Virus record (IMG/VR): IMGVR_UViG_3300008954_003475
Span: 124,001-188,000 of that record
Length of the DNA: 64,000 bases
Direction: 5' to 3' (one strand)
The position numbers and the translations under genes are program-made. Of this stretch, positions 17,787 through 42,266 are shown one piece after another. Positions within the stretch are counted from its first letter, which is position 1. Each line of letters starts with the position of its first letter. Under the pieces are notes generated by a model. The model saw nothing but the letters and a program-made list of their open reading frames with translations. It was not told the DNA's origin and did no database searches.

Positions 17787-18545
17787 CTACCACGTTTCTG
17801 GAATTATTTGCTTAAAATCCTTAGCAAATGTTTGCTTATTTTTTGATAAATCCGAAAAATATTCATCAACATCCTTGTATGAATCTGGAACTTTTAAAAA
17901 CCTTAATCTAATTCCTCTGTTTATATATTTAGAATATACTCTCTCAACAGACCTTGAGCCAGCTTCATCTGAATCCAATATAAACGTTATCCTGTCTGTG
18001 TATCTTGCAAGCTTTAAAAAATGATTTTGAGAAAAGGCTGTTCCACAAATAGCTACAGAGTTTAAAAAGTTATTTTTACTCATAGATATTTGATCAAAGT
18101 AACCTTCTAAAACATATACATTATTAGATTTTAAGATATGCTCTTTTGCATGATTAAGCCCATACAAAATATTTGACTTTTTATAAGATGAATTCTTATA
18201 CTTCGGAATTCCTAAATAATTTCTTTCATCGTCAGCAAGAAGGGTTCTGCCGCTTATTCCGATTGGCTCATTATATTCTGAATAAATTGGAAAGATTAAA
18301 TAAAAGTAATCAGAAAAGTCACTTCCTTTTGAATAGTTTAAAATATTTAATTTATTTAATAAATCTTCAGAAACATATTTTGTTAAAACAGATGGATTTT
18401 GAGGAAAAAAGCCAATATTATTCTTTGTAATAGACTCTTTATCTAATTGCCTATCTTTTACAAGATACTCTAAACACTTATTAGAATTTTTAAGATTGCT
18501 ATGACAAATGTCTATCAAATGTCCTACTCCTTCATTCTGAGTCAT
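17787..18545 (-). CDS. dnaG: DNA primase catalytic core (DnaG Toprim), lacking the Zn-binding domain
   Basis: LIFPI, ISGR, PKYKNS, LYGL, VLEGYFD, GTAF, LDSDEAG, KDVDE; only 252 aa. Confidence 0.9.
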   Translation of the reverse strand: MTQNEGVGHLIDICHSNLKNSNKCLEYLVKDRQLDKESITKNNIGFFPQNPSVLTKYVSEDLLNKLNILNYSKGSDFSDYFYLIFPIYSEYNEPIGISGRTLLADDERNYLGIPKYKNSSYKKSNILYGLNHAKEHILKSNNVYVLEGYFDQISMSKNNFLNSVAICGTAFSQNHFLKLARYTDRITFILDSDEAGSRSVERVYSKYINRGIRLRFLKVPDSYKDVDEYFSDLSKNKQTFAKDFKQIIPETW

Positions 18546-18900
18546 TGCTTTCCACCTTGCTTAACACCCTCTGTGTCTCTTCAACCGCCTTTATCATATG
18601 TTGTGTTACATCGATCTTGCACCCAACCTGATCATTCGAGCAGCCCTTTCCGACCAAAACTCCATTAATAAACTGTGTTTCAACGTCTTGTTCGCAGGTC
18701 TTGCACGGAAAGACAAACGCCTTTTTCTTTTTAGACCTAAGGATATCTCCATTAGCCTTCATCGCCAACTTTGAATATGGCGACACATCAACAAGGACCT
18801 CTCCACACTCATTGCACATTACATCATCTGTATCTATATCTAAAGAACCATCTGTAAATCCATCACTAAACTTACACTTCTGATTACATCTTACAATCAT
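18532..18900 (-). CDS. multi-CxxC Zn-ribbon protein
   Basis: CNQKC, CNEC, CKTC, C..C in 122 aa; overlaps the primase start. Confidence 0.7.
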   Translation of the reverse strand: MIVRCNQKCKFSDGFTDGSLDIDTDDVMCNECGEVLVDVSPYSKLAMKANGDILRSKKKKAFVFPCKTCEQDVETQFINGVLVGKGCSNDQVGCKIDVTQHMIKAVEETQRVLSKVESNDSE

Positions 18901-18909
18901 ACTTCCTCC

Positions 18910-20070
18910 TCATTCTATGGAATTTATCAATGGATTAACGTCCTCTGCTGCCCCATCTGTTTCAAGAGCGCCAACGATAGGGTCTTTATATCCTAAATAT
19001 ATATCTCTAACCTCTTGATCATTAGCTTGTACAAAGCTGTCTCCGGATTCAACAAATGCCAATAAAGCTTTATCTCGGCCTCGTATCTTTTCTCCATTTA
19101 TAAGATAGCTCTGACTGCTTGGCCTTTCTATTAGGCCATACTTTACAGACAGATCAAAAACTTCTTCCTCGGCATTTACAATTCCTTTTTTATATTCTAC
19201 TTTATATTCGGCTTTGCGAAATGGCGCTCCAACCTTATTCTTCTGAATCTTAGCTCTAACCGTATGCCCAATCCGACCTCCCTCATCATCTTTTATAACC
19301 GAATCTGCACTAAAAACAGGAGCCATATTTATCATTAAACTGCATGCATGCTTAAGAGCCTTACCTCCAGGAGAGGTCGTTGGATCTCCAAACATTTGGC
19401 CTAAATTAACACGAACCTGATTAATGCCTATGAAGGCAACATTCGCTTGAGCAACAACCGGAGTAAGCTTCTTCAGCTCTGTGGACAAAAACCGTGGAAT
19501 TGGAGCCATATTTGCCTTGCCTATATCTGCAGAAATTTCCAATGGAGTATTCAAAACAGCTATTGAATCAAGAACTATTATTCCAAGATTTCTAAACCTA
19601 GGATCCTTCCCCTCTATAATATGATCCAAAATTCCCTTCATATTTTTTGATGCTTTTTTAGTTTTAGAATTAACCTTCATCGTTCCAATTAGTCCTTGGA
19701 AAATAGCTCTTGCATCATTAGTCTTTATCACCATAACCCTGGATATGTCTACGCCCTGATTCTGTGCCCACTCTGGATCATAAGTATATTCCGCATCTAT
19801 AAAAAGAGCTGTATTATCAGGATTCTCATCCAAGTAACTCTTTATGCACGATAAGGCAAGCATTGTTTTTCCAGAACTCTCTTGACCTGCAAGCTGAGTG
19901 ATCCTTCCCATAGGGATTCCGCCTATGCCTATCGACTCATCGAGCGCAGGACTGCCTGTACTTATTGCATCATATTTTGTAGAAATATTTCCATCGAAAA
20001 AGATCGTATCTTCCCCAAAGAAATTAACAATTTCTTTCTCGGCCTCAGAGGCCGTTATTTTTATCGACAT
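18910..20070 (-). CDS. recA: RecA/UvsX recombinase
   Basis: GQESSGKT, FIDAE, VLDSIA, INQVR, GGKALK, KNKV; start moved to ATG 20070 with a GGAG RBS. Confidence 0.95.
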   Translation of the reverse strand: MSIKITASEAEKEIVNFFGEDTIFFDGNISTKYDAISTGSPALDESIGIGGIPMGRITQLAGQESSGKTMLALSCIKSYLDENPDNTALFIDAEYTYDPEWAQNQGVDISRVMVIKTNDARAIFQGLIGTMKVNSKTKKASKNMKGILDHIIEGKDPRFRNLGIIVLDSIAVLNTPLEISADIGKANMAPIPRFLSTELKKLTPVVAQANVAFIGINQVRVNLGQMFGDPTTSPGGKALKHACSLMINMAPVFSADSVIKDDEGGRIGHTVRAKIQKNKVGAPFRKAEYKVEYKKGIVNAEEEVFDLSVKYGLIERPSSQSYLINGEKIRGRDKALLAFVESGDSFVQANDQEVRDIYLGYKDPIVGALETDGAAEDVNPLINSIE

Positions 20071-20081
20071 ATTCAACTCCT

Positions 20082-21737
20082 TTAATATTTGTGTCTCAAA
20101 GTACCCTCTTCTGGAGGGCGCCACCCCGTAGGCGGCTGCCAGCTTGACGGATTATTTGCCTGTTCCGATACAATCGCCTCTGTATTTATAAGAAGCAACG
20201 AAATACTTGCAGCATTCTGCAAAGCTATTCTCGACACCTTTTTCGGATCAATAACTCCGGCCTTAACCAAATCTTCAAACTTTCCATTAACAGCATTATA
20301 TCCAAGGTTAGAATTTCTTGATTTCAAAACTCGTTCAACAACTGCCTCATAATCTTCACATGCATTTTCAACGATTTGTCTAATCGGACGAATACATGCA
20401 TCTAAAAGAACCTTTGCCGCAGGAACCAGATCGGCATCCAAGCCTGACAAGCTAACTTTCTTAGCGGCCCTCAGAAGGGCAATGCCACCACCCGGAACAA
20501 AGCCCTCCTCTATGGCCGCCCTTGTTGCACAAATAGAGTCTTCAACCCTATCCCCCTTCTCTCTCAGCTCAAGCTCGGTTGAGTAGCCTACAGTCACAAT
20601 GGCTGCTTTATTTTGCAAATAAGCCATCCTTTTTCTTACATCAAGCCTAGCAGAATCTCCTATCAACTTGTCTAAGTCCTTCTGATAAATAGTTAGACGC
20701 TCATCTATTCTTGCTTGATCTTTTCTTCCCTCTAATATCTTAGTTAAATATTTATTTACAATAACCTTCTTTGCAAAGCCCAAATCCTCAACCTTAGCCT
20801 TTGATAAAGGATTTCCCAACTCTGTTCCGAATATTTTCGTTCCAGTAAGAATAGACATACACTCAAGCCATTCCGTTCTGCTTCCAGGGTCTATGCCTGT
20901 GGGCGGAAGATTAACGGCAACGGCTTTAATTCTTCCTAATTTATTATTTGCAACCAATGTAGCCAACGCTTCTTGCTTTACTGCTTTTGCTATAATCAAA
21001 ACTGGCAAGCTGTTATTTGATAATTCGTTAAGAAGGTCTATACAAGAAGACATTGACGTAATATCTTCATCACAAATTAAAATATTACAATTCTCAATCA
21101 CAACATCCGCCTGCTGTTCTTCTGTTAAAAATGCAGAAGTTACATAGCCGCTCTCAACCTCTACGCCGTCTACAAACCTAACCGAAGTATCTGGGCCTGG
21201 ACATGCCTCTGCGGCAACGGTCCCTTCTAAACCAACCGTATGAAATGCCTCTGCTATCTTATCGCCTATCTCTTGATCATTGTTTGCAGAAATTGTCGCA
21301 ATATTCCTAAGGGTCTCTAAATCACTTACCTCAGTTGCCATATCATTTAGATTAGTCACAACCTGCTTTACAGCCCACTGAACGCCCCGCTTGAAAAAGA
21401 GAGGACTATAATTATCATCTATTAACTCATTTCCTCTTTTTAAAATCTCATGAGCCAAAACAGTGGCAGTAGTTGTTCCGTCTCCGGCAATAGCTGCAGT
21501 TCGACCCGCAGCTTCTTTCACCAACTGACACGCCAGCTCTTCCACCGGGTGTTCAAGAGTTACCTCTCTAGCAACAGTTACACCATCCTTAGTTATAACG
21601 GGCGCTCCAACATATTTCCCCAGAATTACATTCTTACCTTGAGGCCCCATCGTAACGCCAACAGTCTTTGCGAGCTTTTCTGCTCCAGAAAGAAGCGCTG
21701 ATCGAGCTTCTTTGTTATAAGTTAAATCTTTAGCCAT
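20082..21737 (-). CDS. groEL: GroEL-like chaperonin
   Basis: TMGPQGKNV, ITKDGVTVA, GDGTTTATVLA, ISANND, VPGGG, GVIDP; no GGM tail. Confidence 0.95.
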   Translation of the reverse strand: MAKDLTYNKEARSALLSGAEKLAKTVGVTMGPQGKNVILGKYVGAPVITKDGVTVAREVTLEHPVEELACQLVKEAAGRTAAIAGDGTTTATVLAHEILKRGNELIDDNYSPLFFKRGVQWAVKQVVTNLNDMATEVSDLETLRNIATISANNDQEIGDKIAEAFHTVGLEGTVAAEACPGPDTSVRFVDGVEVESGYVTSAFLTEEQQADVVIENCNILICDEDITSMSSCIDLLNELSNNSLPVLIIAKAVKQEALATLVANNKLGRIKAVAVNLPPTGIDPGSRTEWLECMSILTGTKIFGTELGNPLSKAKVEDLGFAKKVIVNKYLTKILEGRKDQARIDERLTIYQKDLDKLIGDSARLDVRKRMAYLQNKAAIVTVGYSTELELREKGDRVEDSICATRAAIEEGFVPGGGIALLRAAKKVSLSGLDADLVPAAKVLLDACIRPIRQIVENACEDYEAVVERVLKSRNSNLGYNAVNGKFEDLVKAGVIDPKKVSRIALQNAASISLLLINTEAIVSEQANNPSSWQPPTGWRPPEEGTLRHKY

Positions 21738-22272
21738 TGTTTCTTTCCTTAAAAATATATGTTAACGCTACAGCCATAGCGTCCGCTTCATCATAACACT
21801 CTTTAGCTATTTTACCATTTTTATTATTTCTCAAACTAAAATTAGAAAAGTATTTTTTTATAAATTCGAAGCACTCTTCTTTCGATGAAATTTTGTAACC
21901 AGCCTCTTTTGAGAGCATAGATCTGATTGTTACGACCGCATATCTATGCGGCTCATACTTTAAACCCTTTAGGCAAGCTATAGAGATTAGCTCATTAAAA
22001 ACAGACAAAACAATTATTGTTCTTGCCGTACTTCTTCCTGCTGGAAATTTATTCGCATATGCTTCTGATGCAACAGAATCTGGCATCTTTTCTACTAAAA
22101 GATCACAGACTTCATCATGCGCACTTAAAGCTCTAACTGCCAAAGAACCTTTATTGCTCTTTGGAGGTTTTATGTGTCCGTACTCTTTTAGCTCTATTGT
22201 CTGATCATCATACTCAAGCAGCGACCAACCAATAGTGCTAGACGATATATCTAATCCTAAAACTGTTTTCAT
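21730..22272 (-). CDS. ruvC: RuvC-like Holliday junction resolvase
   Basis: VLGLDISSSTIGW, central E, C-terminal DEADAMAVA. Confidence 0.85.
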   Translation of the reverse strand: MKTVLGLDISSSTIGWSLLEYDDQTIELKEYGHIKPPKSNKGSLAVRALSAHDEVCDLLVEKMPDSVASEAYANKFPAGRSTARTIIVLSVFNELISIACLKGLKYEPHRYAVVTIRSMLSKEAGYKISSKEECFEFIKKYFSNFSLRNNKNGKIAKECYDEADAMAVALTYIFKERNNG

Positions 22273-22273
22273 A

Positions 22274-23939: not shown

Positions 23940-24448
23940 TCCGTGACCCTCCGAACTGTTGGACCCGTACCTGCAACGGCCTTTTCCTTAGCAATACGCT
24001 TCAGCCTTGCCACCTTCAAATCTAAATCAGCACCCTCTGCCTCTTCGTCCATCTTGGATAACATTTCATTTCTCACTTCGTCTCTTATGCTGTCATAATC
24101 ATCTTCGTCACCTTGACCTTGGCCGGCTGCATCCTCAAACTCTTCAATCTCCCCTTCTCCATCGCTCAAAGCAGAGCCCTCTTGGAACTCCTGAACATCA
24201 TCGGAAGAAGCTTCTTCCGATCTTGTCGGGAAAAACTCTGTCAACATAAACAATGTTATATCAAAAATCAAATCCTCATTTAACTCTTGAGAAAATGATT
24301 GCTCTAAGATTCTGCTCTTTAAAAGCCTAAGTCTTTGCATGTGCAGATCTCCGAAAAGAGCAGCTCCACAAGACGGGCAGCAATTTTTGACGAGACTATG
24401 CCGCATAGTCTCAACAACTTCAAATTCACACCTTTTACAAGTAATCAT
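23936..24448 (-). CDS. Zn-ribbon protein with an acidic linker
   Basis: CKRC...CPSC at the N-terminus; ATGA-coupled to dnaE. Confidence 0.65.
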   Translation of the reverse strand: MITCKRCEFEVVETMRHSLVKNCCPSCGAALFGDLHMQRLRLLKSRILEQSFSQELNEDLIFDITLFMLTEFFPTRSEEASSDDVQEFQEGSALSDGEGEIEEFEDAAGQGQGDEDDYDSIRDEVRNEMLSKMDEEAEGADLDLKVARLKRIAKEKAVAGTGPTVRRVTE

Positions 24449-27400
24449 ACCTCTCTCCCATATACCCTCTCAAGAGAAGAAAGGGCTAAATCTTTTTGGT
24501 CCAAATAAGTATTGACTCTACATATGGCCTTAATTGGAATGCCGTCTTTCAACATAGTCCTATACTTTGCATAATCTTCGGCCCATAACGTTAAGCCACA
24601 AGTATCACCATTTATATCTTCCACAAGATATTTGGCAAACTTCTTGCCTACATTTTTACCATTTTTAATCTTAAATTCCTTAATTTTTGTTTTTATTATA
24701 GCTTCAATCTTTATTCTAGATCCACTATTCAAAGTGTCAATCTGCGACAAAGGCGTTACCAAAGAACCGCCCGAGAAAAAACTCTTAAAAACTTCGTGCA
24801 AATTTCCGCTCAAGGATCTTCCCAACACCTCTCTTTCGAAAAGAAGCGTCTCTTTTCTATCCCAACCCTCTTCTATCTTTCCAAACTCTAGTCCAGACAC
24901 TATCTCTCGAAATTCATTTGAATCTTTTGAAATAGAATGAACCTCAAATAATTCTGTTCTTCTATCTTTTGGAATCTTCTTTAGATTCGGATTATGTTTA
25001 AAAATTCTTGATTCAATCATCTTCTTAATTGCATTTTTAGCCTTCGAACGATACTTCTGATAATTATCATGCATATCCTTTCTTGTTCTGTCAAAACAAT
25101 CTAACGCTCCTGCTTTCGAAAGAGACTGTATAACCGTCTTCCCAACTGTTCTGCTGTCGTTTCTAGACAAGAAATCTGGATAATTTTCATAAGGCTGATT
25201 TTCCATTATACTCTCTATAGCCTTATCTCCAACACCTTTTATTGCAGATATTCCAGTTGAGATATTTCCATCTTCTAATATCTTATACCTGCCAACACTG
25301 TGATTTACGTTTGGCGGCAAAACCTCGATCCCCATCTTTCGACATTCATCAAGATACTCTTGCACTTTATCACTATTTGGATCTTCCGAATTTATTAATG
25401 CACACATAAATTGAGATGGATAATGACACTTTAACCATGCGGTATAAAAAGAAATGATAGAATAAGAAATCGAATGTGACTTATTAAAAGCATATCCGCC
25501 AAGCGGCTCTATATACGACTTCCAAATTTTGCACGCTATCTCATATGACATCTTACTGTATTCCATACAGTCTTTAACAAAGTTTGTTTCTGTGCGCAAA
25601 ACAAGCCTTGGATCCTTGCCCTTTAGCTTGCTTATCTTTCTCAAAGCATCAGCTTGATTCAAGTCCCATCCTGCGCAATCTTGCGCAATAATCATCGCCT
25701 GCTCTTCATACACCAAAACACCATAGGTCTTTTCCAAAGCTCTTTTTAAATTAGGATGCTCATATGTAGCCTTCTCCATTCCAAGCCTTCTCTTTGCATA
25801 GCGCTTCCTTTCGGCTGGCTTACAAGAGGGTCTTCCTATTGCGTTAATTGCAGATATATCTTCTATATTTTTAGGTTTAAGCCTTATACAGAAAGGCGTC
25901 AAAGAAGATTCTAATTGAAATAATCCAACAGTTTTACCCCGACCAATCATAGCATAGGCCTTTTCATCCTTCATGTCTATGTCTTCTACCGTAAGCTTTT
26001 CCCCAGTAGTTTCTTCAATAAGTTTAAATGCATTATCTATTACAGTAAGCGTCTTTAGGCCTAAAAGATCCATCTTTATAAGACCATTCTCTTCACACCT
26101 AGTCTTTTCCCACTGCGTTATATTGTGCCCTTCCTTATCTATTCTCAAAGGAATAGTTTCATATAATGCATTTTCACCAATAACCACACCTGCTGCATGC
26201 ATTGACCAGTTTCTTGTAAGATTTTGCAATTTAGACGCATACGCGTACAACTCTGGATATTGGCTCATATACTCTGACAGCTGTGTGCTTTCAGACATTG
26301 CATCATCTAGAGTTTCTGCATCAGGCATAATAGCCGTTATTGTATTTGCAATTTTAAAAGCAGAAGATTTATCCCCACCAAGCCTCAAACTTCTCGCAAC
26401 ATCTTTAATCACAACCCTTGGAGATAGAGTGCTCCAGTTAGATATAGAAGCAACTTTGTCCGATCCATACTTATCTTTTATATAATCTTTCACAATTCCA
26501 GGATCAGAAAAATCAGAATCAATATCTGGAAAAGACTTCTTTTGATTATTGTGAAATCTTTCAAAAATTAAGTCATACTCTATCGGGTCAACATTTGTTA
26601 TGCCTGTAAGATACGCTACAAGCGAACCAGCCGCCGAACCGCGAGCAGGGCCTACCGGCATTCTTTCCTTTGCCCAATTAACATAGTCTGCAACGATCAA
26701 CATATAGGATGAAAAATTCTTATCTTCCAATACAGACAACTCTGTCTTTACCCTCTCCCAATACTCATCTCTATCATCGTTGTCAAGATGAGACAGCTTA
26801 TCCTTAAAACCCTCGATGCACTTGTATCGAAGATATGCTTTATCATCCGGAACATTAGATCCCAAATTATCCTTCCACTCTCTGAACTCTTTAAAGTCTG
26901 GTTCTTCAGAAACGGAAAAAACAGGCAGCATGGCGCCTTTTGGTTTTATATAAGAAGGCTCAGCACATGCATTCATAATCTTTAATGAATTTTGCATACC
27001 TATTTCGGCAATCTTTGGACCAAAAAAATCAATAATTTCATTATGTGTTTTTAGATACATATCTTGAACACCATAACGAAACCTATCTGGATCATCTATT
27101 GCTTTTTTATCTTTGATAGCAAGCATGCAATCATGAAACTTTGCATGCTCCCTGTCTCTATAGTGAGCATCACAAGTTATGACATAAGGAATGTTATAAT
27201 CACTAGAAATTTTCAACAAAGACTCATTAAGTTTTATTTGATTTACTTCTTTTCCATTTTTATTTACAGCATAAAGACTGTGCGGCTGAAGTTCCAAAAA
27301 AAATCTATCTTTAAAAATACCATTCAATCTTTTAATATGCGACAAAGCCAAATCTTCTTCTTGCTCCGTTATAAGAGTTTTTGCCACGATACCATTGCAA

Positions 27401-27816
27401 CAAGCCGTTAATGCAAAAACTCCTTCATTATAATTCTCTATATGCTCCCAAGATATTCTAGGAGTTTGCTTTCCCATATATCCAGAAACCTGGTTTTGAT
27501 ATGATAAATAATTAAGCCTAAGAATATTTTTAAAACCAACTTCACTATTAGCCAAAAGAACCAAGTGATAAGACTTCTTGCTAGTTAAATCGTCTGTAAA
27601 ATATGCCTCCATCCCAGGAATAAGCTTTACACCAGTCTCTTGACTGGCTTTCCAAGCATCATATAATGCAGTCAATGTTCCATGATCTGTAACAGCAACT
27701 GCGGGATGACCAACCTCTTTAGCTCTTCTGAACAAATCATAAGTATCGTTCATCCCATCCAATGGGCTTCCTAGCTCTGTATGATTATGCAAAGATACAA
27801 AGGGACCTTTTACCAT
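24445..27816 (-). CDS. dnaE: DNA polymerase III alpha subunit (family C, DnaE)
   Basis: PHP domain (LHNHT, TDHG, GMEAY, CDAHY), GPARGSAAGS, FPDIDSDF, HAAGVV, KMDLLGL, YAFNKSH, C-terminal OB fold. Confidence 0.97.
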   Translation of the reverse strand: MVKGPFVSLHNHTELGSPLDGMNDTYDLFRRAKEVGHPAVAVTDHGTLTALYDAWKASQETGVKLIPGMEAYFTDDLTSKKSYHLVLLANSEVGFKNILRLNYLSYQNQVSGYMGKQTPRISWEHIENYNEGVFALTACCNGIVAKTLITEQEEDLALSHIKRLNGIFKDRFFLELQPHSLYAVNKNGKEVNQIKLNESLLKISSDYNIPYVITCDAHYRDREHAKFHDCMLAIKDKKAIDDPDRFRYGVQDMYLKTHNEIIDFFGPKIAEIGMQNSLKIMNACAEPSYIKPKGAMLPVFSVSEEPDFKEFREWKDNLGSNVPDDKAYLRYKCIEGFKDKLSHLDNDDRDEYWERVKTELSVLEDKNFSSYMLIVADYVNWAKERMPVGPARGSAAGSLVAYLTGITNVDPIEYDLIFERFHNNQKKSFPDIDSDFSDPGIVKDYIKDKYGSDKVASISNWSTLSPRVVIKDVARSLRLGGDKSSAFKIANTITAIMPDAETLDDAMSESTQLSEYMSQYPELYAYASKLQNLTRNWSMHAAGVVIGENALYETIPLRIDKEGHNITQWEKTRCEENGLIKMDLLGLKTLTVIDNAFKLIEETTGEKLTVEDIDMKDEKAYAMIGRGKTVGLFQLESSLTPFCIRLKPKNIEDISAINAIGRPSCKPAERKRYAKRRLGMEKATYEHPNLKRALEKTYGVLVYEEQAMIIAQDCAGWDLNQADALRKISKLKGKDPRLVLRTETNFVKDCMEYSKMSYEIACKIWKSYIEPLGGYAFNKSHSISYSIISFYTAWLKCHYPSQFMCALINSEDPNSDKVQEYLDECRKMGIEVLPPNVNHSVGRYKILEDGNISTGISAIKGVGDKAIESIMENQPYENYPDFLSRNDSRTVGKTVIQSLSKAGALDCFDRTRKDMHDNYQKYRSKAKNAIKKMIESRIFKHNPNLKKIPKDRRTELFEVHSISKDSNEFREIVSGLEFGKIEEGWDRKETLLFEREVLGRSLSGNLHEVFKSFFSGGSLVTPLSQIDTLNSGSRIKIEAIIKTKIKEFKIKNGKNVGKKFAKYLVEDINGDTCGLTLWAEDYAKYRTMLKDGIPIKAICRVNTYLDQKDLALSSLERVYGREV

Positions 27817-34200: not shown

Positions 34201-34595
34201 TCTAAACTAAAACCTGAAATAATCTCCGAAAGCTCTTCAGCTACAGCCTCAAGGCCCCCAGACGCAAACGCCCCTCCTAATGATTCTGTTAAATCTTTTA
34301 TAGAAAGACCGCCCTGTTCGGTTGAATCTTCCTCTATCTCGACATACTCAGGATCATCCTCATCTTCTGATTCACCACCAAAACTAGGAACCCACTCAGC
34401 GCCCTGCAAATCCTCTTCGTCTTCGTATGCGCCCTCATCTTCTAACTCTTCATCTTCATCTGCAGCGGACATCAGAACTGCCATCTCTACTGCTCTGTTA
34501 AGGTTAGAGTGTAAATTCCCCAAAGAAACAAGAAATTCATCCAGGTTGTCATCCCCTACCTGACTTATAACCACCTGTATCTTCTCGTTGTCCAT
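28230..34595 (-). CDS. giant orphan protein (2121 aa) with a sigma-region-2-like segment and several Cys motifs
   Basis: Uninterrupted ORF with AGGAGG RBS; acidic N-terminus; CAIC, KCP, KCG, NCP, VCG, VCPHSH. Confidence 0.8.
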   Translation of the reverse strand: MDNEKIQVVISQVGDDNLDEFLVSLGNLHSNLNRAVEMAVLMSAADEDEELEDEGAYEDEEDLQGAEWVPSFGGESEDEDDPEYVEIEEDSTEQGGLSIKDLTESLGGAFASGGLEAVAEELSEIISGFSLDLDSISPFEEPVQLFVVAYGFSNFVKDDFSDISITLSEPGAEPEAEPEAVPVPTIGGIPISRPVDDILKKNVKIRDDISVIHNLYLNMNLEQKFFESDESEDSYVNRLAKAQEEDENVNALNFHPIFEELGDNAVSFSVDESSDPPKLVFSVEKMQGIIQALVSSLSSLNNAVRKSKGKLAGESFENFHQRLREFETQRQSFSGSLDDIAAAIKKRDSHALSLVYKLKGQGVDVSDFRDTYKISNVIKDETSQLFRLFYDLAIGLVFVDIESEAYQYKLSKKLRETYDEWKNIYAEDLEHQLTSKLKKFFNSSDSSGWLRSSLSTYLAGSIKRNMLQEGAYKKAFGVVTTSWNYADCAICGTKIYTRKRQDTPGVEGRPSRIDLREYSEYEDDRYSLFRVEDNSLITLDELNAVESFDPPPTLAERGEGSMSWSEIEALVHSGSRSKHIEGVQRRSWALRLMGARPIPTRKKEVSNFKYKCPYSSIEDRPSSLGEVSETRARFKCGLAIDATPLLGPDAHGVSPESLQSTRLGSMEEDPEERLEAQLDEAIQLGSITEEQKLGFVEELRRRRGGGWKFSNKYFNCPARIVIPEEDRSPLTFRKKYKEYMKKYSYIATPIAGPVTEDKISAGHIRLPVNSDGSYADIEEGTLSYFVCGAQTSLSSFSRSANEEGSLPGIIKDLVSKAEENNEFSKFFMTNLIETLIYLGVDIDDILPFVSNIESPTAAVAELEKSGRLNRLSNILALAMASPANLGASVGQWSDDQGVESALTRMDILGDIKLVCPHSHRFTIKDSVFFGRTHTGINLRNRRRAVYTWKEIIDSGLLFSEGYDNFQSTLKLRSKNGSSYIVPVEEWATLSGDDRRLSYEDWVDRVDKVSRVAFSDHYGEGSYSFGAVPKQYLWGSEEGYRLSSTRQKEARDPDTIKVIDENRGSALDPGGKKDSEGKLRGVDSGTKAAKQRFDNQEAAGVFDRAKDDLIEDGVGGLVRITSPVGRTLKSFIVNIQDWLAMSTTLDIKGALIGSPILLEESDEHAMLESARSIIDVIVRSIEQEDEEGSDLPIELTSLVDSALQKFKEKYYKRLDGLDLRLIGVWGESFDIISNEKIMNNIVHSVISAATDQLGPEESRSYELTLFENNRLALDHIAALSYGGNNIRTLLDNFRSTFVPDLTREQESRILSSSNPGLMIPKMKGKEFMARVLQASSALYLADAVSRVYNFYMRDLNSKEYIGYSIGIDLSSADKVLNLERQNLDSLTIGLDPGVIRSMTMSEDKINVFYEMHFDNIVGCVTALQDEMFRMRTACSSQIYMKKAIEYIQGEFNEVLDSSTALEADVDRARLIVDNVMSNPPITTISLNSDGKYAEHFGSSDSEPVDPNSLVPLFGAYLVEYKGREDYYPIFALTGRGAVYHDFNINIPEPSSLNNIYVLSNKNLPMSIELEDLYDRLPEEYRANGWKIYQVSTDHYKMADRKTNAGVKSGVSLIYHPGTSAVLEEEAVMGYQNSELGYDSQAGLHIGPLAIRSGTDNLFPPSPVNGVNNVGVPIPLDYENNDSKKNKIFPIIGARIPISLPTSRPGDMIELDVSDFLLRDPPDAAFTLLREINLAYSKMSHDLSLAANDAERGMITDRYKEVISSLHNTYRGLPYYVENSKSGTKVDRKSIGTLGAAHASDKFSPRVSAYLPLVDWVTMHRMISAMNPQYGPEFGGHQLWNAEDGPEVVNETMEAIEQFLINVHGLDKLARLIGEELGGRYIDPTDLLDPVNRLFRNGSITRKECERLFGYKIGDDDDEGSYSGGDGFPWMGLSPKRRTSAVNLSGGKMFDRFGSWVKGTSSYYPVGLSSEVDVDTEEPHAYIKMLNVIFAPDKKKKRLEEARDPDSETILTADDLYAFEAFEGIPNSQRYYPVPEDPKELARFVKILKKTKHIGAQKYAEALSEYLINHMLNELAQDITGIERQGFHRFNLIKYSENLKRHIYRSGIIQSTELQALWLKLTK

Positions 34596-35956: not shown

Positions 35957-36754
35957 TTAATCAAGATATTCTGCCAATAAGTCTTTTATTATTTTATATC
36001 TATCAAGCTTCTTAAGCCTCATGCTTGCGGCCCAACCGGTGAGGCCCACCTTCTTTGCTGCATCTTTTATAGAAAAACCCTCAAGGCATACCATCTTTAA
36101 TATTTCAGCTGTCTTATTATCTATTATCTCTGATAATCTTTCTATAGCAATCTCAAGATCGATCCGGTCATAGACGGTGGTGGTGTCTGCATACAAACTA
36201 TCCGTTTCTGCCAAAGAGCTTTGAAACTCGGCATACTCTTCTCCGCTTCCAGGATCTGTTTTCGGCATAGAACTGAAAACAAGTTCTTCTCTAGATTTTC
36301 TATAATTTGGCTTATACTCCTGATTGCACTGTTCGCAAAGATGTCTTGAAACAACAGAATTGTTTTTTGGATTTCTTATCTTCTTAAGAGCTATAAGGCC
36401 ACCGCATTCGCATAGGTCTCCAGCTATTTTCTCATAAAGACTAAAGGCATCATTTGACAACTTATTAACACTCTTTATTTTTGAAACTAATTTATTTCTA
36501 AGATGCGTATGAAGAAAGGTGCTAAGCTTAACATTCTTACTTGTGTCAAAAGCATTTATACCCTCTATAATTATTATAGATAATTCTTGCTTTATATCTT
36601 CAAAGTTATATCCTGGCATATATGTTTTAGATGCCCACTTGCAAAGCAATGGATCAATTCTTTCAAGAACCCTGTTATACCCTTGCTTGGTGGTGGTATT
36701 AACATAAACATCTTCATCATACATTCTAACCACACCTTCATATTCACGCTTCAT
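35957..36754 (-). CDS. sigma-70-family sigma factor with a Zn-ribbon insertion
   Basis: Region 2 EDIKQEL..FDTSKNVKLSTFLHTHLRN; CECG..CEQC insert; region 4 ILKMVCLEGFSIKDAAKKVGLT. Start moved to ATG 36754 (AGGAG RBS). Confidence 0.85.
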   Translation of the reverse strand: MKREYEGVVRMYDEDVYVNTTTKQGYNRVLERIDPLLCKWASKTYMPGYNFEDIKQELSIIIIEGINAFDTSKNVKLSTFLHTHLRNKLVSKIKSVNKLSNDAFSLYEKIAGDLCECGGLIALKKIRNPKNNSVVSRHLCEQCNQEYKPNYRKSREELVFSSMPKTDPGSGEEYAEFQSSLAETDSLYADTTTVYDRIDLEIAIERLSEIIDNKTAEILKMVCLEGFSIKDAAKKVGLTGWAASMRLKKLDRYKIIKDLLAEYLD

Positions 36755-36762
36755 ATAAACTC

Positions 36763-37527
36763 CTATTCTGCCCAAGCATCTTGGCATATCGGCTTGTAAT
36801 CACACCACCTGCAAAGTGCCGATGGTTTTTTAACCCAGGTTGAATCAGTATCGATAAAACCTGCTCTTTTTATAATATTCTTCTCACAACTCTTTAGATC
36901 ATCCATTGTGAACGTGTAATCATAAGACTTGCAGTCATGCTTTAACATGATGAAAGAACCATGAACAATCTTAACATCTTTAAACCTTCGCCTTAAAGCT
37001 TCCGAATAAACAAGCAGCTGAAAATCTGTCAAGTACTTGGCGTTCTTGCTAGTCTTATAATCAACAACTCTATATTCTCCCGGGCCGACCAAGTCAACCC
37101 TGTCAATAAAGCCTCTAATCAAAGTGTTCTGATCTGTTTTGAAATTAAATGGCATCTCGATACCAATAACATTGGGAGTGCCTTCGGCTCTGATCTTATC
37201 CAAATAAGTTTGCATAATGCCCCTGAGACAAACTAGCCCTGGAGTGTCCCCATTTGGAGTCCAAACACGTTCCTCAAGAAGATTTATATCAAACTCTTTA
37301 ACGGCAGTCTTGAAACATTCTTTCATCAGAATAGAATATTGATTCTCGCCTATTTTTTCTTCTTTTATTTTTTTATGGAAAAGCTCTAAAACCCTATGCG
37401 CGCAAGAGCCAAACTCTGTAAACCCCCACTTTTGCTGGGGTAAATCAGGCTTTTCTATATATCTATAATGATATTTCTTAGGACACTTCTCATAGGTATC
37501 CATTGATGATACAGATAATTTTAACAA
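36763..37527 (-). CDS. PD-(D/E)XK exonuclease (RecB/AddB/Cas4-like, Fe-S type)
   Basis: CPKKY, GSCAH..LE, GFIDRVD, VVDYKT, QLLVY, CRWCDYKPIC. Confidence 0.9.
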   Translation of the reverse strand: MLKLSVSSMDTYEKCPKKYHYRYIEKPDLPQQKWGFTEFGSCAHRVLELFHKKIKEEKIGENQYSILMKECFKTAVKEFDINLLEERVWTPNGDTPGLVCLRGIMQTYLDKIRAEGTPNVIGIEMPFNFKTDQNTLIRGFIDRVDLVGPGEYRVVDYKTSKNAKYLTDFQLLVYSEALRRRFKDVKIVHGSFIMLKHDCKSYDYTFTMDDLKSCEKNIIKRAGFIDTDSTWVKKPSALCRWCDYKPICQDAWAE

Positions 37528-38425: not shown

Positions 38426-38458
38426 ATTATCCTCACATGTTATGAGAAAATTAGCAGA

Positions 38459-40564
38459 CTATCGAGTTATAAACTCAAGTTCGCTTTCCCCATTAATCTT
38501 TGTAATATTAACTACATTGTCAAACTTTTCTTTCAAAGATTCATCATGAGTAATTACCAAAATCTTATATTTATCCTCTAAAGATTTTATTACATTTACA
38601 AACAGAGTCTCTACACCAAACCTATCCAGCGGAGAGTTGACTTCATCTAAAAGCAAAAACTCTAGAGAAGAACCGCCATACCTGCTTGATATATCACTTA
38701 GCGCAACCCTAAGGGCCAGAGAGATTCTGAACTTCTCTCCACCGCTGAGTGACTTAAAGTTTTGTAAATGTCCATCTTTTCTTACTTTAAGATCTAAAGT
38801 TTCAATGATAGAGGTTCCATCTGCCCCAAGTCTTTGTGTTTCCAAAACAATAATAACTGGCTCATTACATATTGATGCCAATATAGTATTTGCGCTCTTC
38901 TCAAGATCTTCTATAACAGCGTCTAATAAAATCGTCTGAATACCTCCCTTGCCAAATATCTTTGCAAGCTTATCAAACAACGCGGATCTCTCCATCTTTT
39001 TAGCGACCTTGTTTTTATCAGACCTCATTTTAGATTCTTGCTCTTTAAGCAGAGAAGCTCTTTCCGTCAGCCTTCCCATCTTCTTGTCTTCCTCAGACAC
39101 ATCCTCTACAACACTATCCTTTTCCTCTCTAAGTTGTCCCAGCTTTAACCTTAAGCTTTGAAAATCTTCATTCTTAATAGATTCCAAAATATCCATATTA
39201 GTTTTTAATTTAAACTTTGCCTTATCCAAAGAGGAATCAACCTTCTCCAAAGACTTATTAGCATCTTCCAAACCAACTACAACCAAATCTAACTTGTAAG
39301 TTAATGATCCAATATTTGTATCAATTTCTTTTAATTCATTATTATCTTTTCTTATTGCAAGCCACTTATCAACCTCCTTCTCTAAAGATCGAACTTCCTT
39401 GTTGGCCTCTCCAGATTGAAACTTATAGTGCTTAACCTTAAAATTGTGATCGCCCTCTAGCTTTCTAAAAAGCTTATTATCAATAGTTTGATTGCAAACA
39501 TAACATTCATCAGAAGAAACGTTTATTTCCCCCAACGACTTAAGAGCCTCTTCCGAAGATGCCTTTTGCGACTTATAATGAGTAAGTTGCGCTCTTAGGT
39601 CTTCAATCTTTCCATCTGGAATCTCTATAGCTTTTCTGTTTTTTATTTTCTTTTTTAAAGTATTTATCTTTTTATCAATTTCTTTTTTATCAACTTTATA
39701 TTTTTCTACAGATTCTGCAGCAGAAGATGATTTATCAGAAAACTCTTTACATTCTTGTTTTAAAATCTTTATTTGATCAATAACCTTATCATATGTGTCC
39801 GTATCAAGAGACTTCTTTATAACCGTATATTTCTTGCTCAAAGAATCAATCTGCTCAAATAAGACTTTCTTCTTTGAGCTAAGCTCATTAGCCTTCTTCT
39901 TTGACTCTTTGATTTCAATATTTGTAGTTTGAAGCTTTTCAACTACCGAATCATATTCTTCTACTGACTTCTTTAAAACCTTACACTCTATATTGATATC
40001 TCTGACCTTTTTTCTAGCAGCTTTTTCATAATCATCCCACCTAGAGATATCAACAATAGACTTTAAAATCTCCTTCTTTCTTGAAGGATCTGACTCTGCA
40101 AATTCAGAAATATCATTCTGCCTAAAGTAAACAGAGTTTATAAAGGTTTTATTATCTAATTTTATTGTTGATTCAATCTTATCATTTGTATCTCCAGATG
40201 TAGAGCAAGATATATCTTGCCACTCGCCAGACTTATCTAACATAGAAAACTCAACTGTTGAGGTTGAATTTGCGCGATTTCTGAATCTTTCAACAAGATA
40301 GCTTTCTCCATCATGCTTAAACTCAAGAGACACAGAGCAGGTTGTCTCGCCCCATCGAATTATATCATCCATCATGGCTGCTCTAGACTTGTTGAACAAA
40401 CACCAAAGAATTGCCTCAAAGATCGCGCTCTTGCCCGAACCGTTAGACTTATTGTAATTCCCTTCTGTATTCCCAATAAGAAGTGCTGAATTAAATTTAG
40501 AAAAATCTATTTCACTATCTTTGTGAGAAAAGAAGTTTTCCAATCTAAGTTTAGATGGTATCAT
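38459..40564 (-). CDS. sbcC: SbcC/Rad50/gp46-like SMC ATPase
   Basis: NGSGKS, Q-loop FRQ, coiled coils, Zn hook CYVC, LSGGE, LLLDE, ITH. Confidence 0.95.
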   Translation of the reverse strand: MIPSKLRLENFFSHKDSEIDFSKFNSALLIGNTEGNYNKSNGSGKSAIFEAILWCLFNKSRAAMMDDIIRWGETTCSVSLEFKHDGESYLVERFRNRANSTSTVEFSMLDKSGEWQDISCSTSGDTNDKIESTIKLDNKTFINSVYFRQNDISEFAESDPSRKKEILKSIVDISRWDDYEKAARKKVRDINIECKVLKKSVEEYDSVVEKLQTTNIEIKESKKKANELSSKKKVLFEQIDSLSKKYTVIKKSLDTDTYDKVIDQIKILKQECKEFSDKSSSAAESVEKYKVDKKEIDKKINTLKKKIKNRKAIEIPDGKIEDLRAQLTHYKSQKASSEEALKSLGEINVSSDECYVCNQTIDNKLFRKLEGDHNFKVKHYKFQSGEANKEVRSLEKEVDKWLAIRKDNNELKEIDTNIGSLTYKLDLVVVGLEDANKSLEKVDSSLDKAKFKLKTNMDILESIKNEDFQSLRLKLGQLREEKDSVVEDVSEEDKKMGRLTERASLLKEQESKMRSDKNKVAKKMERSALFDKLAKIFGKGGIQTILLDAVIEDLEKSANTILASICNEPVIIVLETQRLGADGTSIIETLDLKVRKDGHLQNFKSLSGGEKFRISLALRVALSDISSRYGGSSLEFLLLDEVNSPLDRFGVETLFVNVIKSLEDKYKILVITHDESLKEKFDNVVNITKINGESELEFITR

Positions 40565-41730
40565 ACTTCTCCCATTATTATCTTAGCCTCTTTAATCAAA
40601 GCTTTTTCGTATTCTTTTTCAATGCCTTGTGAATCAACAAAGGCCTTAAACATCGAAAAATCATCTTTATGATCTAATATAGAATTATCTCTGACAAGCC
40701 TTTGCACAATTGTTTCTATACCAATTTTCGAAACATGGAAAGCTCCAAGATTATAAAGAGCTGATTGAATCAACTCCTTATCCATAGCTGGCAGGACCTT
40801 TTCATCAACTGCAAACTTGAACCTAACAATCTTATCTTTTACATCATGTTCTTCCAAAGAGTTATCGATAGCATCATTTATTTCCGAAAAGTCAACCCCC
40901 GATAAGTTGACAGAAGCATCTAGCAAATCTCTTACCGGAATTTTACAAAACTTTGCTTTTTTCTTTGAAATATCATAATCAACAAAATACTTATCTACCC
41001 CTGCATCTCCAAAGTTAGATCGCTCCATAGAACCTGTATACACACACACGGGCGCTTGCTTGCGCAAAACCCTAAACTGGTGCAGGTGGCCCATCATAGT
41101 AATGTCGCAACCCTTAAAGGCTGATGGGCTTGCCATGACTTCTGTTCCGCCATAATCATTATAGCTTCCTTCATAAAAGAAGTTGTGACCGACAGATACT
41201 ATTGGATCATCATTTGAAATTGACCCTATAAGCTCTCTGACCTGTGAATCATATGCTTCGGATTGCTCCTTTGTGTTGCTTCCCTCGTACATCTTTCTAT
41301 CTCTATAAGGAAGCAAAATCAAGTTTACCTTTTGATTCTTTGCATTACAAACCTCTACAACCTCTGGCTCAAGCAGCATTCTAACGTTTGGATATTCTGC
41401 TGCAGATAAGGAAACTATAGAGCTTGTAAAGCTCGTTCCACTCTTCTTATAGTCATGGTTACCCATGATTACAAATGTTGCTATATTTGCATTCGACAAC
41501 CGCTTCAACGCCTTGTCCACAATATTCATATGCTCAATGCTCGGATCTCTTTGTTCAAACATATCTCCCGTCTGAACAAAGACATCAGCTTTTGTTTTAA
41601 TTGTATGGTCAATTATATAATTAAGAGTTTTCTCATAATCATCAACCCTAGTATTTCCGCCTGCCCCATTCGACCTTCCAAGGCCAAATACAGCACCGAT
41701 ATGAGTGTCTCCACAAACAACTATTCTCAT
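40561..41730 (-). CDS. sbcD: SbcD/Mre11/gp47-like nuclease
   Basis: GDTHIG, TGDMF, MGNHD, GH, MGHLH, YTGS. Confidence 0.93.
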   Translation of the reverse strand: MRIVVCGDTHIGAVFGLGRSNGAGGNTRVDDYEKTLNYIIDHTIKTKADVFVQTGDMFEQRDPSIEHMNIVDKALKRLSNANIATFVIMGNHDYKKSGTSFTSSIVSLSAAEYPNVRMLLEPEVVEVCNAKNQKVNLILLPYRDRKMYEGSNTKEQSEAYDSQVRELIGSISNDDPIVSVGHNFFYEGSYNDYGGTEVMASPSAFKGCDITMMGHLHQFRVLRKQAPVCVYTGSMERSNFGDAGVDKYFVDYDISKKKAKFCKIPVRDLLDASVNLSGVDFSEINDAIDNSLEEHDVKDKIVRFKFAVDEKVLPAMDKELIQSALYNLGAFHVSKIGIETIVQRLVRDNSILDHKDDFSMFKAFVDSQGIEKEYEKALIKEAKIIMGEV

Positions 41731-42266
41731 TTGTTAGAATACCTCCTACGTATAGTAACCTTTACTTTCTTAAGTAATTTCTTTGCAGCTTGAACATTCT
41801 TTCGATCAATAGTCTCTAGATATTCATCTGTCTTTTTCATAAGCTTTTCTACCCATTCAATATCATCTGAATGCATAGCCTGTGTTCTTCTAAACACATG
41901 TGACAACTCCAAGAGTTGTGAGAAATTTGAAACATGCTTTTTTCTAGCAACCTTTGTAACTTTGGCTGGATCAACAATCTTTGATAGCTCAATCAAAGAT
42001 GTAGAAAAATCAACCCCTTTACATAGAATATAAAAGTCTATGACATTATTCGAAGCACCACAGCCAAAGCAATAAAAATTATTATTGTCCTCATCTATAT
42101 AAAGCGAACCAGTCCTTTCGGAACCACTCTTGTGTTCCTTGGATGGACACTTACACCTGTGCGTAAAATTGCCACTGTTCACTTGCTCTAAAGCAATTGA
42201 AAACTTGCTGGCTAATTCTGTTATACTTACAGCTATGTTTATTTCTTCTTTCGAATATTTAATCAA
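41727..42266 (-). CDS. stand-alone primase-type CHC2 zinc-finger protein
   Basis: CP..EH....ERTGSLYI.....FYCFGCGASNNVIDF....GVDF followed by a short helical C-terminus. Confidence 0.85.
   Translation of the reverse strand: MIKYSKEEINIAVSITELASKFSIALEQVNSGNFTHRCKCPSKEHKSGSERTGSLYIDEDNNNFYCFGCGASNNVIDFYILCKGVDFSTSLIELSKIVDPAKVTKVARKKHVSNFSQLLELSHVFRRTQAMHSDDIEWVEKLMKKTDEYLETIDRKNVQAAKKLLKKVKVTIRRRYSNK

What the first reader, a model, noticed from the sequence alone, without database searches (positions are those of the whole stretch)
17787..42266. Split DnaG primase: catalytic core and CHC2 zinc-binding domain in separate genes about 23 kb apart
Seen: 17787-18545 has only the polymerase/Toprim core. 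41727-42266 has only a DnaG-type CHC2 finger plus a helical tail and overlaps the FtsK-like and sbcD genes. Known: the DnaG Zn-binding domain is normally in the same chain and can act in trans between primase molecules. Inference: a two-subunit primase, possibly linking priming to SbcCD-dependent recombination-driven replication. Alternatively, the multi-CxxC protein overlapping the core gene (18532-18900) replaces the missing domain.
Basis: partly seen in the sequence, partly recalled or inferred. Interest (0 to 1): 0.65.

Follow-up and report, generated by a model that had tools for sequence, protein, structure and literature searches.

The report
Two-gene DnaG primase, marine jumbo phage
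An uncultured marine jumbo phage, and the whole lineage it belongs to, encodes its DNA primase as two separate proteins: a catalytic core, and a zinc-finger subunit whose helical tail is predicted to dock on that core. This layout was noted once in passing for other jumbo phages but has never been tested.

Summary
ORF 17787-18545(-) is a 252-aa DnaG catalytic core (DNAG_N + Toprim) with no zinc domain and no helicase-binding domain. ORF 41727-42266(-) is a 179-aa DnaG-type CHC2 zinc-binding domain (ZBD) followed by a three-helix tail. It lies 23.2 kb upstream on the same strand, with 4-nt overlaps to the FtsK-like and SbcD genes.

The split is not an artefact.
- All 18 relatives' contigs long enough to hold both genes, including a complete 335-kb genome, have exactly one core and one Zn gene, 23-29 kb apart.
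- None has a full-length or archaeo-eukaryotic-type (AEP) primase.
- Catalytic and zinc-ligand residues are invariant.
- Some relatives carry an intein exactly at a zinc-ligand cysteine.

A complex prediction supports binding: ipSAE 0.85 against a best control of 0.00. The contact runs through the Zn protein's tail (residues 115-144) onto the Toprim helix 173-184.

The neighbouring 8-Cys protein is a conserved double zinc ribbon, but it is absent from the complete relative, so it is unlikely to replace the ZBD. The SbcCD link rests on synteny only.

Iyer et al. 2021 already noted, in one sentence, standalone primase zinc ribbons beside DnaG-like primases in PolB-type jumbo phages. This is therefore a new, Pol III alpha-type member of a known but uncharacterised arrangement. 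No biochemistry exists.

The parts
17787..18545 (-). Primase catalytic subunit: the DnaG RNA-polymerase domain (RPD), made of the N-terminal subdomain plus Toprim. 252 aa, with no ZBD, no C-terminal helical subdomain and no helicase-binding domain.
   Evidence: Pfam DNAG_N + Toprim_2. The profile aligns to Aquifex DnaG 2au3 residues 109-336 (E 2.9e-28). Invariant in 37 homologues: E147, D191/D193, D225/D227, K115-Y116-x-N118-x-S120 and R100.
41964..42266 (-). Zn subunit, residues 1-101: DnaG-type CHC2 zinc-binding domain.
   Evidence: PF01807, E 5.5e-10. Invariant C40, H45, C66, C69 plus a GNFTH motif. VIA Z 10.3 to 2au3 and 9.8 to 1d0q.
41727..41963 (-). Zn subunit, residues 102-179: flexible linker plus a three-helix tail, the predicted docking module for the core.
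   Evidence: The model has helices 115-131, 133-152 and 158-177, and the linker has pLDDT 66. Predicted interface residues 115-144 contact core residues 173-184, 91, 135, 138 and 210. Interface residues are more conserved than the rest of the tail (p=0.004).
18532..18900 (-). 122-aa double Cys4 zinc-ribbon protein with an acidic C-terminus, overlapping the core gene. A possible accessory factor, not required.
   Evidence: Eight invariant Cys. Sits directly upstream of the core in 25 of 25 close relatives. Absent from the complete genome G016. No Pfam, PHROG or fold match.
42263..43354 (-). FtsK/SpoIIIE-like ATPase. Its stop codon overlaps the Zn gene's TTG start.
   Evidence: PF01580, E 5.5e-31. 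Junction TTGA. Gene order conserved in 13 of 13 relatives.
40561..41730 (-). SbcD/Mre11-like nuclease. Its start overlaps the Zn gene's stop.
   Evidence: Metallophos. ATGA junction preceded by AGGAGG. Synteny conserved.
38459..40564 (-). SbcC/Rad50-like ATPase, downstream of SbcD.
   Evidence: ORF of 701 aa read directly. The homologue in L153 carries AAA_23/SbcC_Walker_B hits.
24445..27816 (-). Full-length DNA polymerase III alpha (PHP, NTPase, finger and HhH domains). This is the replicase the primase must serve, and it lies between the two primase genes.
   Evidence: Pfam. Present in all six long relatives, none of which has PolB.
18910..20124 (-). RecA/UvsX-like recombinase at the head of the RecA-(8-Cys)-core-sigma-like block.
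   Evidence: PF00154, E 5e-52. Order conserved.
17344..17781 (-). 145-aa sigma-70 region 4-like HTH protein immediately downstream of the core.
   Evidence: Pfam Sigma70_r4_2, E 1.5e-6. Conserved position in 25 relatives.

Best explanation
The phage makes a heterodimeric DnaG-type primase from two genes.

- **Catalytic subunit.** The 252-aa core (17787-18545) supplies the template groove and the Toprim metal site that polymerises ribonucleotides.
- **Zinc subunit.** The 179-aa Zn protein (41727-42266) supplies the CHC2 zinc-binding domain. In DnaG and T7 primases this domain selects the initiation trinucleotide and controls primer length.
- **How they join (inferred).** A three-helix tail on the Zn protein (residues 112-179) docks non-covalently on the Toprim helix 173-184 of the core, taking the place of the covalent ZBD-RPD linker. 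The roughly 12-residue flexible linker (residues 100-112) lets the ZBD swing to an active site, either in its own dimer or in a neighbouring one on the DnaB-like helicase. That helicase is encoded outside the window at G000:C1:16696-18090.

**Shown:** domain content, residue conservation, strict co-occurrence, and the absence of any other primase.

**Inferred:** binding (model only), the role of the tail, and activity.

**Probable origin.** Duplication of a full-length gene followed by complementary loss. The Zn-protein profile aligns colinearly about 25 residues into the start of DNAG_N of full-length primases, and the core still carries that same segment.
For: 1. **Domain content.** Complementary halves of one primase family.
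2. **Residue conservation.** Zinc ligands C40/H45/C66/C69 are invariant in 41 homologues. Toprim E147, D191, D193, D225, D227 and the KYxNS motif are invariant in 37 homologues. Sequence identity falls to about 45-55% across these sets.
3. **Separate in every homologue listed.** The 120 listed of 233 core homologues are about 250 aa (a few shorter fragments) and carry no PF01807. The 120 listed of 131 Zn homologues are mostly 170-194 aa and carry only PF01807. That search only reports proteins of 0.55-1.75 times the query length, so it could not have found fused forms.
4. **Co-occurrence.** In 13 of 15 relatives' contigs there is one Zn ORF on the same strand, 23.5-28 kb upstream of the core. 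The other two contigs end before the expected place. The same holds in five longer records, including G016 (335,169 bp, terminal repeats, 100% complete), G017 (99%) and G018 (94%).
5. **No other primase.** No second DNAG_N, no T7-type zinc ribbon in the window's own record, and no Prim-Pol or DNA_primase_S. The only other Toprim protein is topoisomerase IA.
6. **Complex prediction.** ipSAE 0.84/0.85/0.85 with a best control of 0.00. That mark was reached by 58 of 80 solved complexes and by 2 of 110 mismatched pairs. The runs agree in at least 83% of contacts and partner pLDDT is at least 80.
7. **Interface conservation.** The interface includes the near-invariant tail residues S122 and R126 and the core residues K178 and Y182. 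Interface residues in the tail are more conserved than the rest of the tail (entropy 1.44 against 2.11, p=0.004).
8. **Inteins.** Inteins sit exactly at the fourth zinc ligand in G016 and in at least five other 50%-identity clusters, as is typical for essential replication proteins.
9. **Precedent for action in trans.** ZBD-RPD action between separate polypeptides has biochemical support in bacterial DnaG (Larson et al. 2010, PMC2978363; Corn et al. 2005, cited there).
Against: - No experiment exists. Binding is a model's confidence, computed with my own alignments. The pass could partly reflect memory of intramolecular DnaG packing, especially if the tail helices are homologues of the first RPD helices.
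- Neither subunit has a recognisable helicase-binding domain, so recruitment to the DnaB-like helicase is unexplained.
- The core's interface residues are no more conserved than the rest of the core, because the core is uniformly conserved.
- The tail matches only generic three-helix bundles.
- The tail's homology to the start of DNAG_N is not significant on its own.
- The window's own record is only 66% complete. The absence of other primases therefore rests on complete relatives and on Pfam models only.
Confidence: 0.75

Rival explanations
1. The core is a self-sufficient, low-specificity primase, or it borrows a host factor. The Zn protein has a separate job inside the FtsK-like/SbcCD module, for example recognising ssDNA at processed ends or origins.
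For: The Zn gene is translationally coupled to the FtsK-like and SbcD genes. That order holds even in very distant members. Standalone CHC2 proteins occur in small temperate phages, next to recombination genes and with no Toprim gene within the 7.7 kb inspected. An example is Ruminococcus phage RG-TP1 gp61.
Against: The complex prediction places the conserved tail on the core with zero-scoring controls. The ZBD is of the primase type, with ligands and flanking motifs conserved. The core has no other ZBD available in complete genomes.
Confidence: 0.13
2. The 8-Cys double zinc-ribbon protein (18532-18900), which overlaps the core gene, is the functional replacement for the missing ZBD or an obligatory third subunit.
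For: It is conserved immediately upstream of the core in 25 of 25 close relatives and in G017-G021. It has eight invariant Cys and an acidic tail of the kind used by replisome adaptors. It overlaps the core gene by 14 nt.
Against: It is absent from the complete genome G016, where RecA is followed directly by the core, and the family profile finds no copy anywhere in that genome. It shows no similarity to primase zinc ribbons in Pfam, PHROGs or fold search. A genuine DnaG ZBD already exists in every genome.
Confidence: 0.07
3. The split is not functional. It is either an assembly or pseudogene artefact, or the two halves are rejoined by protein trans-splicing, as in cyanobacterial DnaE.
For: Inteins are common in this lineage, occurring in the Zn protein and topoisomerase IA, with a probable one in DnaE of G016.
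Against: The two ORFs have the same lengths in hundreds of independent contigs. There are no internal stops. The Zn protein's C-terminus is a confident helical bundle, not an N-intein. The core aligns to the RPD from residue 7, which leaves no room for a C-intein.
Confidence: 0.02

Closest known systems
Bacterial DnaG primase (e.g. Aquifex aeolicus 2au3, E. coli DnaG)
   Same: Same CHC2 ZBD fold (Z 10.3), same RPD N-subdomain and Toprim, and the same catalytic motifs. It serves a Pol III alpha / DnaB-type replisome.
   Different: The domains lie on two polypeptides encoded 23 kb apart. There is no C-terminal helical subdomain and no DnaB-binding domain. The Zn ligand spacing is Cx4H rather than CxxH. 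A clade-specific three-helix tail is present on the ZBD chain.
Standalone primase-type zinc ribbon accompanying DnaG-like primases in 'group 2' jumbo phages (Iyer, Anantharaman, Krishnan, Burroughs & Aravind 2021, Viruses 13:63, PMC7824862)
   Same: A DnaG Toprim protein and a separate primase-type zinc-ribbon protein in a jumbo phage.
   Different: That note concerns T4-paradigm, PolB-type phages. It gives no partner-binding module, spacing or test. This lineage uses a full-length Pol III alpha and has no PolB. I could not verify whether the two zinc-ribbon families are orthologous, because no supplements are held.
ZBD acting in trans on the RPD of another primase molecule (E. coli and S. aureus DnaG chimeras, Larson et al. 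2010, PMC2978363; Corn et al. 2005)
   Same: Shows that a ZBD can serve an RPD on a different polypeptide and set template specificity.
   Different: There, both molecules are full-length and are brought together by the helicase. Here, separation is obligate and a dedicated tail is predicted to provide the tether.
Phage T4 gp61 / T7 gp4 primases
   Same: Phage Toprim primases that lack a DnaG-type C-terminal helicase-binding domain. Weak profile match of the core and weak fold match of the ZBD to gp61.
   Different: They are single-chain and have a Cys4 zinc ribbon (PF08273), which is not found in the window's own record.
Split DnaE of cyanobacteria (split intein) and the split minimal Pol III alpha of group 2.2 jumbo phages
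   Same: An essential replication enzyme encoded in two distant genes.
   Different: No split-intein halves are present here. Reconstitution is predicted to be non-covalent.
Standalone ZnF_CHCC proteins of small temperate phages (Ruminococcus phage RG-TP1 gp61; phrog_11992, phrog_18097)
   Same: A short protein with a CHC2 ZBD plus a helical extension. It aligns to Zn residues 5-152 at 26% identity.
   Different: A 36-kb siphophage with no Toprim core in the 7.7 kb inspected. The partner is unknown.

Membership tests
DnaG-type (Toprim) primase | CHC2 zinc-binding domain (PF01807) with four zinc ligands | tested here: met
   Found on the 179-aa chain: 39.4 bits against a cut-off of 24.9. C40/H45/C66/C69 are invariant. 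Fold Z 10.3 to 2au3.
DnaG-type (Toprim) primase | RNA-polymerase domain: DNAG_N subdomain plus a Toprim fold with the acidic metal ligands | tested here: met
   Found on the 252-aa chain: PF08275 + PF13155. E147, D191, D193, D225, D227 and KYxNS are invariant. Profile E 2.9e-28 to 2au3.
DnaG-type (Toprim) primase | ZBD and RPD in one polypeptide | tested here: not met
   Two ORFs 23,182 bp apart. They are also separate in all 18 informative relatives.
DnaG-type (Toprim) primase | C-terminal DnaB-binding domain (PF10410 / PF08278) | tested here: not met
   No hit in either chain at E<=0.1. The canonical DnaG P0380 shows both domains in the same kind of scan.
DnaG-type (Toprim) primase | Template-directed oligoribonucleotide synthesis | not testable with these tools
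   Needs a primer-synthesis assay.
Jumbo-phage DnaG Toprim + standalone primase zinc ribbon (Iyer et al. 2021, group 2) | A separate zinc-ribbon gene accompanying a DnaG-like Toprim protein | tested here: met
Jumbo-phage DnaG Toprim + standalone primase zinc ribbon (Iyer et al. 2021, group 2) | T4-paradigm replication with a family B polymerase | tested here: not met
   No PF00136 in the window's own record or in six relatives, three of them at least 94% complete. A full-length Pol III alpha is present instead.
Split-intein trans-spliced enzyme (cyanobacterial DnaE type) | An N-intein at the end of the first half and a C-intein at the start of the second | tested here: not met
   The Zn C-terminus is a confident three-helix bundle. 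The core aligns to the RPD from residue 7. Neither window protein has an intein Pfam hit.
T7/T4-type primase | Cys4 Zn_Ribbon_Prim (PF08273) | tested here: not met
   No match in the window's own record.
Archaeo-eukaryotic primase / PrimPol as an alternative priming enzyme | A Prim-Pol (PF09250) or DNA_primase_S (PF01896) domain anywhere in the genome | tested here: not met
   No Prim-Pol in the window's own record. Neither family is found in six relatives, including complete G016. PF01896 was not run on the window's own record.

The most novel reading that the evidence does not exclude
The Zn protein is an exchangeable specificity and regulatory subunit, not merely a detached domain.

- Its first two tail helices are a retained copy of the first helices of the RPD. 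This would be a signature of fission by duplication and complementary loss. They now act as a docking module on the Toprim domain.
- The free third helix recruits the DnaB-like helicase.
- Because the gene is translationally coupled to FtsK-like/SbcD/SbcC across a very deep lineage, the supply of the initiation-site reader would be tied to the expression of end-processing recombination proteins. That would couple lagging-strand priming to recombination-dependent replication.
Probability: 0.2. Interest if true: 0.65.

Novelty: new member of a known kind. Interest (0 to 1): 0.45.

Why it matters
If confirmed, this would be a natural, obligate two-chain DnaG primase. It would be a ready-made system for separating the two halves of priming, namely site recognition by the ZBD and catalysis by the RPD. 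Until now that has only been possible with engineered truncations and chimeras.

It would also document how an essential replication enzyme can be split and held together by a small helical adaptor. The lineage is abundant, uncultured and oceanic, and it runs a bacterial-type replisome of Pol III alpha, DnaB and DnaG. The family is large, with 191 clusters at 50% identity scoring E<=1e-10, so annotation pipelines that label either half simply 'DNA primase' mislead.

Tried and rejected
- **Close cultured relative.** Megablast and tblastn against GenBank phages found none. The best hits are full-length DnaG genes at under 35% identity. Bacillus phage 0305phi8-36 ORF236 is a normal 424-aa primase.
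- **Tail as a copy of the core N-terminus.** hhalign of A1 against A2 was not significant.
- **Tail homology to full-length DnaG.** The tail-only profile finds no DnaG in PDB or Pfam. hhalign of the tail against two full-length DnaG proteins picks the start of DNAG_N each time, but only at E of about 0.1. The whole-protein profile does run through that segment in 2au3, P0379 and P0380. I treat the homology as likely but unproven.
- **Fold of the tail.** Only generic three-helix bundles match.
- **8-Cys protein.** No fold, Pfam, PHROG or Atlas identity.
- **Atlas search on the tail.** Uninformative.
- **Split-intein trans-splicing and the pseudogene or assembly-artefact reading.** Rejected; see the third rival explanation.
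- **Second Toprim hit in relatives.** It is topoisomerase IA, not a primase.
- **The 'moraphage' paper (PMC12619734).** Checked as a possible description of this lineage; its text has no mention of Pol III, DnaB, GroEL, SbcC or FtsK, so nothing ties it to this clade.
- **Not done.** The look-up of sequencing runs and read laying were not used, because expression data would not change the verdict.
Full report
**Setting.** The window is bases 124001-188000 of a 221,878-bp linear IMG/VR virus record, estimated 66% complete. GC content is 38.5%, and 183 of 197 called genes lie on the minus strand. No close cultured relative exists in GenBank phages.

The replication genes are of bacterial type. 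A full-length Pol III alpha lies at 24445-27816. A DnaB_C helicase is encoded outside the window at G000:C1:16696-18090. There is no PolB. This fits the poorly characterised marine jumbo cluster PGC_A of Weinheimer & Aylward 2022 (PMC9123017), which is marked by PF07733. It does not fit the PolB-type 'group 2' of Iyer et al. 2021.

**Observation.** Both ORFs exist as described.
- The 252-aa product of 17787-18545(-) has DNAG_N and Toprim domains only.
- The 179-aa product of 41727-42266(-) has the DnaG CHC2 zinc ribbon only.
- They hit complementary parts of one full-length phage primase family. On phrog_6444, the Zn protein covers positions 44-145 and the core covers 130-361.
- Against Aquifex DnaG 2au3, the Zn profile covers residues 8-132 and the core profile covers 109-336.
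- The Zn protein folds with pLDDT 87.8 into a ZBD plus three helices. The ZBD superposes on 2au3 (Z 10.3, rmsd 2.5 A, 89 residues) and on 1d0q (Z 9.8) (Foldseek agrees).
- The gene overlaps are real: TTGA with the FtsK-like gene, ATGA with SbcD, and 14 nt between the 8-Cys ORF and the core.

**The split is a fixed, ancient feature.**
- All 120 listed of 233 core homologues carry no zinc ribbon, and nearly all are about 250 aa. The 120 listed of 131 Zn homologues carry nothing but the zinc ribbon, and most are 170-194 aa. Both sets come from marine and other metagenomes, on contigs up to 422 kb. That search only reports proteins of similar length to the query, so it could not have found fused forms.
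- In 13 of 15 long IMG/VR relatives there is exactly one Zn ORF on the same strand, 23.5-28 kb upstream of the core. The other two contigs end before that point.
- Five more records show the same layout at 25-29 kb. They include G016 (335,169 bp, terminal repeats, 100% complete), G017 (99%) and G018 (94%).
- These genomes have no second DNAG_N, no Prim-Pol and no DNA_primase_S. Their other Toprim protein is topoisomerase IA.
- An exhaustive profile search shows the 'ZBD + tail' architecture is a large family. There are 5,533 hits at E<=1e-3 and 191 at E<=1e-10. Nearly all of the best 150 are 170-230 aa and cover the whole profile.
- Distant members (P0270, P0388) still sit in the FtsK-Zn-SbcD-SbcC context.

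**Evidence that both halves are functional and work together.**
- Zinc ligands C40, H45, C66 and C69 are invariant, as are the catalytic residues E147, D191, D193, D225, D227 and the KYxNS motif.
- In G016 the Zn protein is 558 aa, because an intein with a homing-endonuclease-like insert is placed exactly at the fourth zinc ligand. At least five other clusters carry a large insertion at the same place, and the two I scanned show intein or LAGLIDADG hits. Inteins typically sit at critical sites of essential replication proteins.
That mark was reached by 58 of 80 solved complexes and by 2 of 110 mismatched pairs. The runs agree in at least 83% of contacts and partner pLDDT is at least 80. My own alignments were used, so the calibration holds only roughly.
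- The interface is tail residues 115-144 against core residues 173-184 plus 91, 135, 138 and 210. It contains the near-invariant S122 and R126, and K178 and Y182. Tail interface positions are more conserved than the rest of the tail (p=0.004).
- The model supports binding; it does not show it.

**Mechanism proposed.** The core is the catalytic subunit and the Zn protein is the initiation-site reader. The tail replaces the covalent linker, and the flexible segment 100-112 lets the ZBD reach an active site in cis or in trans. ZBD-RPD action in trans is established for bacterial DnaG (PMC2978363). How the enzyme reaches the helicase is open. Neither chain has a DnaB-binding domain, and the third tail helix lies outside the predicted interface.

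**Origin.** The whole-protein Zn profile aligns colinearly about 25 residues into the start of DNAG_N in three unrelated full-length primases: 2au3, P0379 and P0380. The core also starts with that segment. A tail-only profile picks the same place, but only at E of about 0.1, and it does not match the core's own N-terminus. Duplication followed by complementary loss is therefore plausible but unproven.

The 122-aa protein at 18532-18900 is a real, conserved double Cys4 zinc ribbon with an acidic tail. It lies upstream of the core in 25 of 25 close relatives and in G017-G021. The complete genome G016 lacks it altogether while keeping both the core and the Zn protein. It also resembles no primase zinc ribbon. 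It may be an accessory factor for the primase or for RecA; it is unlikely to be the substitute ZBD.

**SbcCD link.** The FtsK-like, Zn, SbcD and SbcC genes are overlapping and syntenic across the whole family. One fused primase, P0379, also lies about 3.4 kb from a fused SbcCD-like gene in an unrelated contig. This is compatible with co-regulation of priming and recombination-dependent replication, but it is no more than synteny.

**Prior knowledge and novelty.**
- Iyer et al. [quoted passage not shown]
- No held paper uses the phrase 'split primase', and the searches I ran found no biochemical characterisation of such a split.
- PHROGs also contains short 'DNA primase' families that match the Zn protein: phrog_18097, phrog_360 and phrog_11992.
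- The finding is therefore a new member of a known but uncharacterised arrangement, in a Pol III alpha-type marine lineage.
- Three details are new: the conserved spacing of about 25 kb, the predicted three-helix tether, and the intein at the zinc ligand.

**Limits.** Nothing here was measured at the bench.

Noticed in passing
L149:1400-3076 (+) = G016:C1:47899-49575; also P0246, P0302, P0304, P0307, P0320: In the complete relative G016, the Zn protein is interrupted by an intein of about 380 aa with a homing-endonuclease-like insert. It sits exactly at the fourth zinc-ligand Cys of the CFGC motif. At least five other 50%-identity clusters carry an insertion at the same site.
   Followed up: partly
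L150:2952-5999 (+) in G016; G016:C1:68112-69272: G016 is rich in inteins. Its topoisomerase IA carries Intein_splicing + LAGLIDADG_3 domains. Its Pol III alpha match is split into two pieces inside a 1408-aa frame, so it probably holds a further intein.
   Followed up: partly
window 18532-18900 (-): A conserved 122-aa protein with two Cys4 zinc ribbons (eight invariant Cys) and an acidic C-terminus lies between RecA and the primase core. No known family or fold matches it. It is absent from complete genome G016.
   Followed up: yes
window 17344-17781 (-) and 35957-36787 (-): There are two separate sigma-like genes. A 145-aa protein matches only sigma-70 region 4, right after the primase core. 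A 276-aa protein matches only region 2, about 18 kb away next to a PD-(D/E)XK nuclease. This could be another split, or simply two divergent sigma factors.
   Followed up: no
window 20082-21737 (-) and 18910-20124 (-): A 551-aa ORF that reads as a GroEL-like chaperonin (judged from its translation; no Pfam scan was run) overlaps the start of the RecA/UvsX-like gene by 43 nt. The order GroEL-RecA-(8-Cys)-core-sigma-like appears conserved in relatives, judged by ORF sizes.
   Followed up: partly
window 28230-34595 (-); G000:C1:46676-56635, 62583-70799, 92104-98016: Very large ORFs of 2121, 3319, 2738 and 1970 aa. The only one scanned, the 2121-aa ORF in the window, has no Pfam match. It sits between Pol III alpha and the sigma-like and nuclease genes, inside the replication block.
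   Followed up: no
whole record G000: Extreme strand bias: 183 of 197 called genes are on the minus strand, and 95% of the record is coding.
   Followed up: no
L068:6043-6489 (Ruminococcus phage RG-TP1 gp61): A small temperate siphophage encodes a 148-aa standalone CHC2 protein that aligns to residues 5-152 of the window's Zn protein. It lies beside Sak4 and ERCC4-nuclease genes, with no Toprim gene in the 7.7 kb inspected. Its partner (host DnaG?) is unknown.
   Followed up: partly
L156:316-2496 and 5906-7132: An unrelated phage-like contig has a fused SbcD-SbcC gene (726 aa) about 3.4 kb upstream of an unsplit ZBD+RPD primase (P0379, 408 aa). That primase is among the full-length proteins closest to the Zn-protein profile.
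   Followed up: no
L059 and L063 (relatives G011, G006): An insertion of about 0.8 kb lies between the Zn gene and SbcD in two relatives. It breaks the otherwise overlapping gene pair.
   Followed up: no
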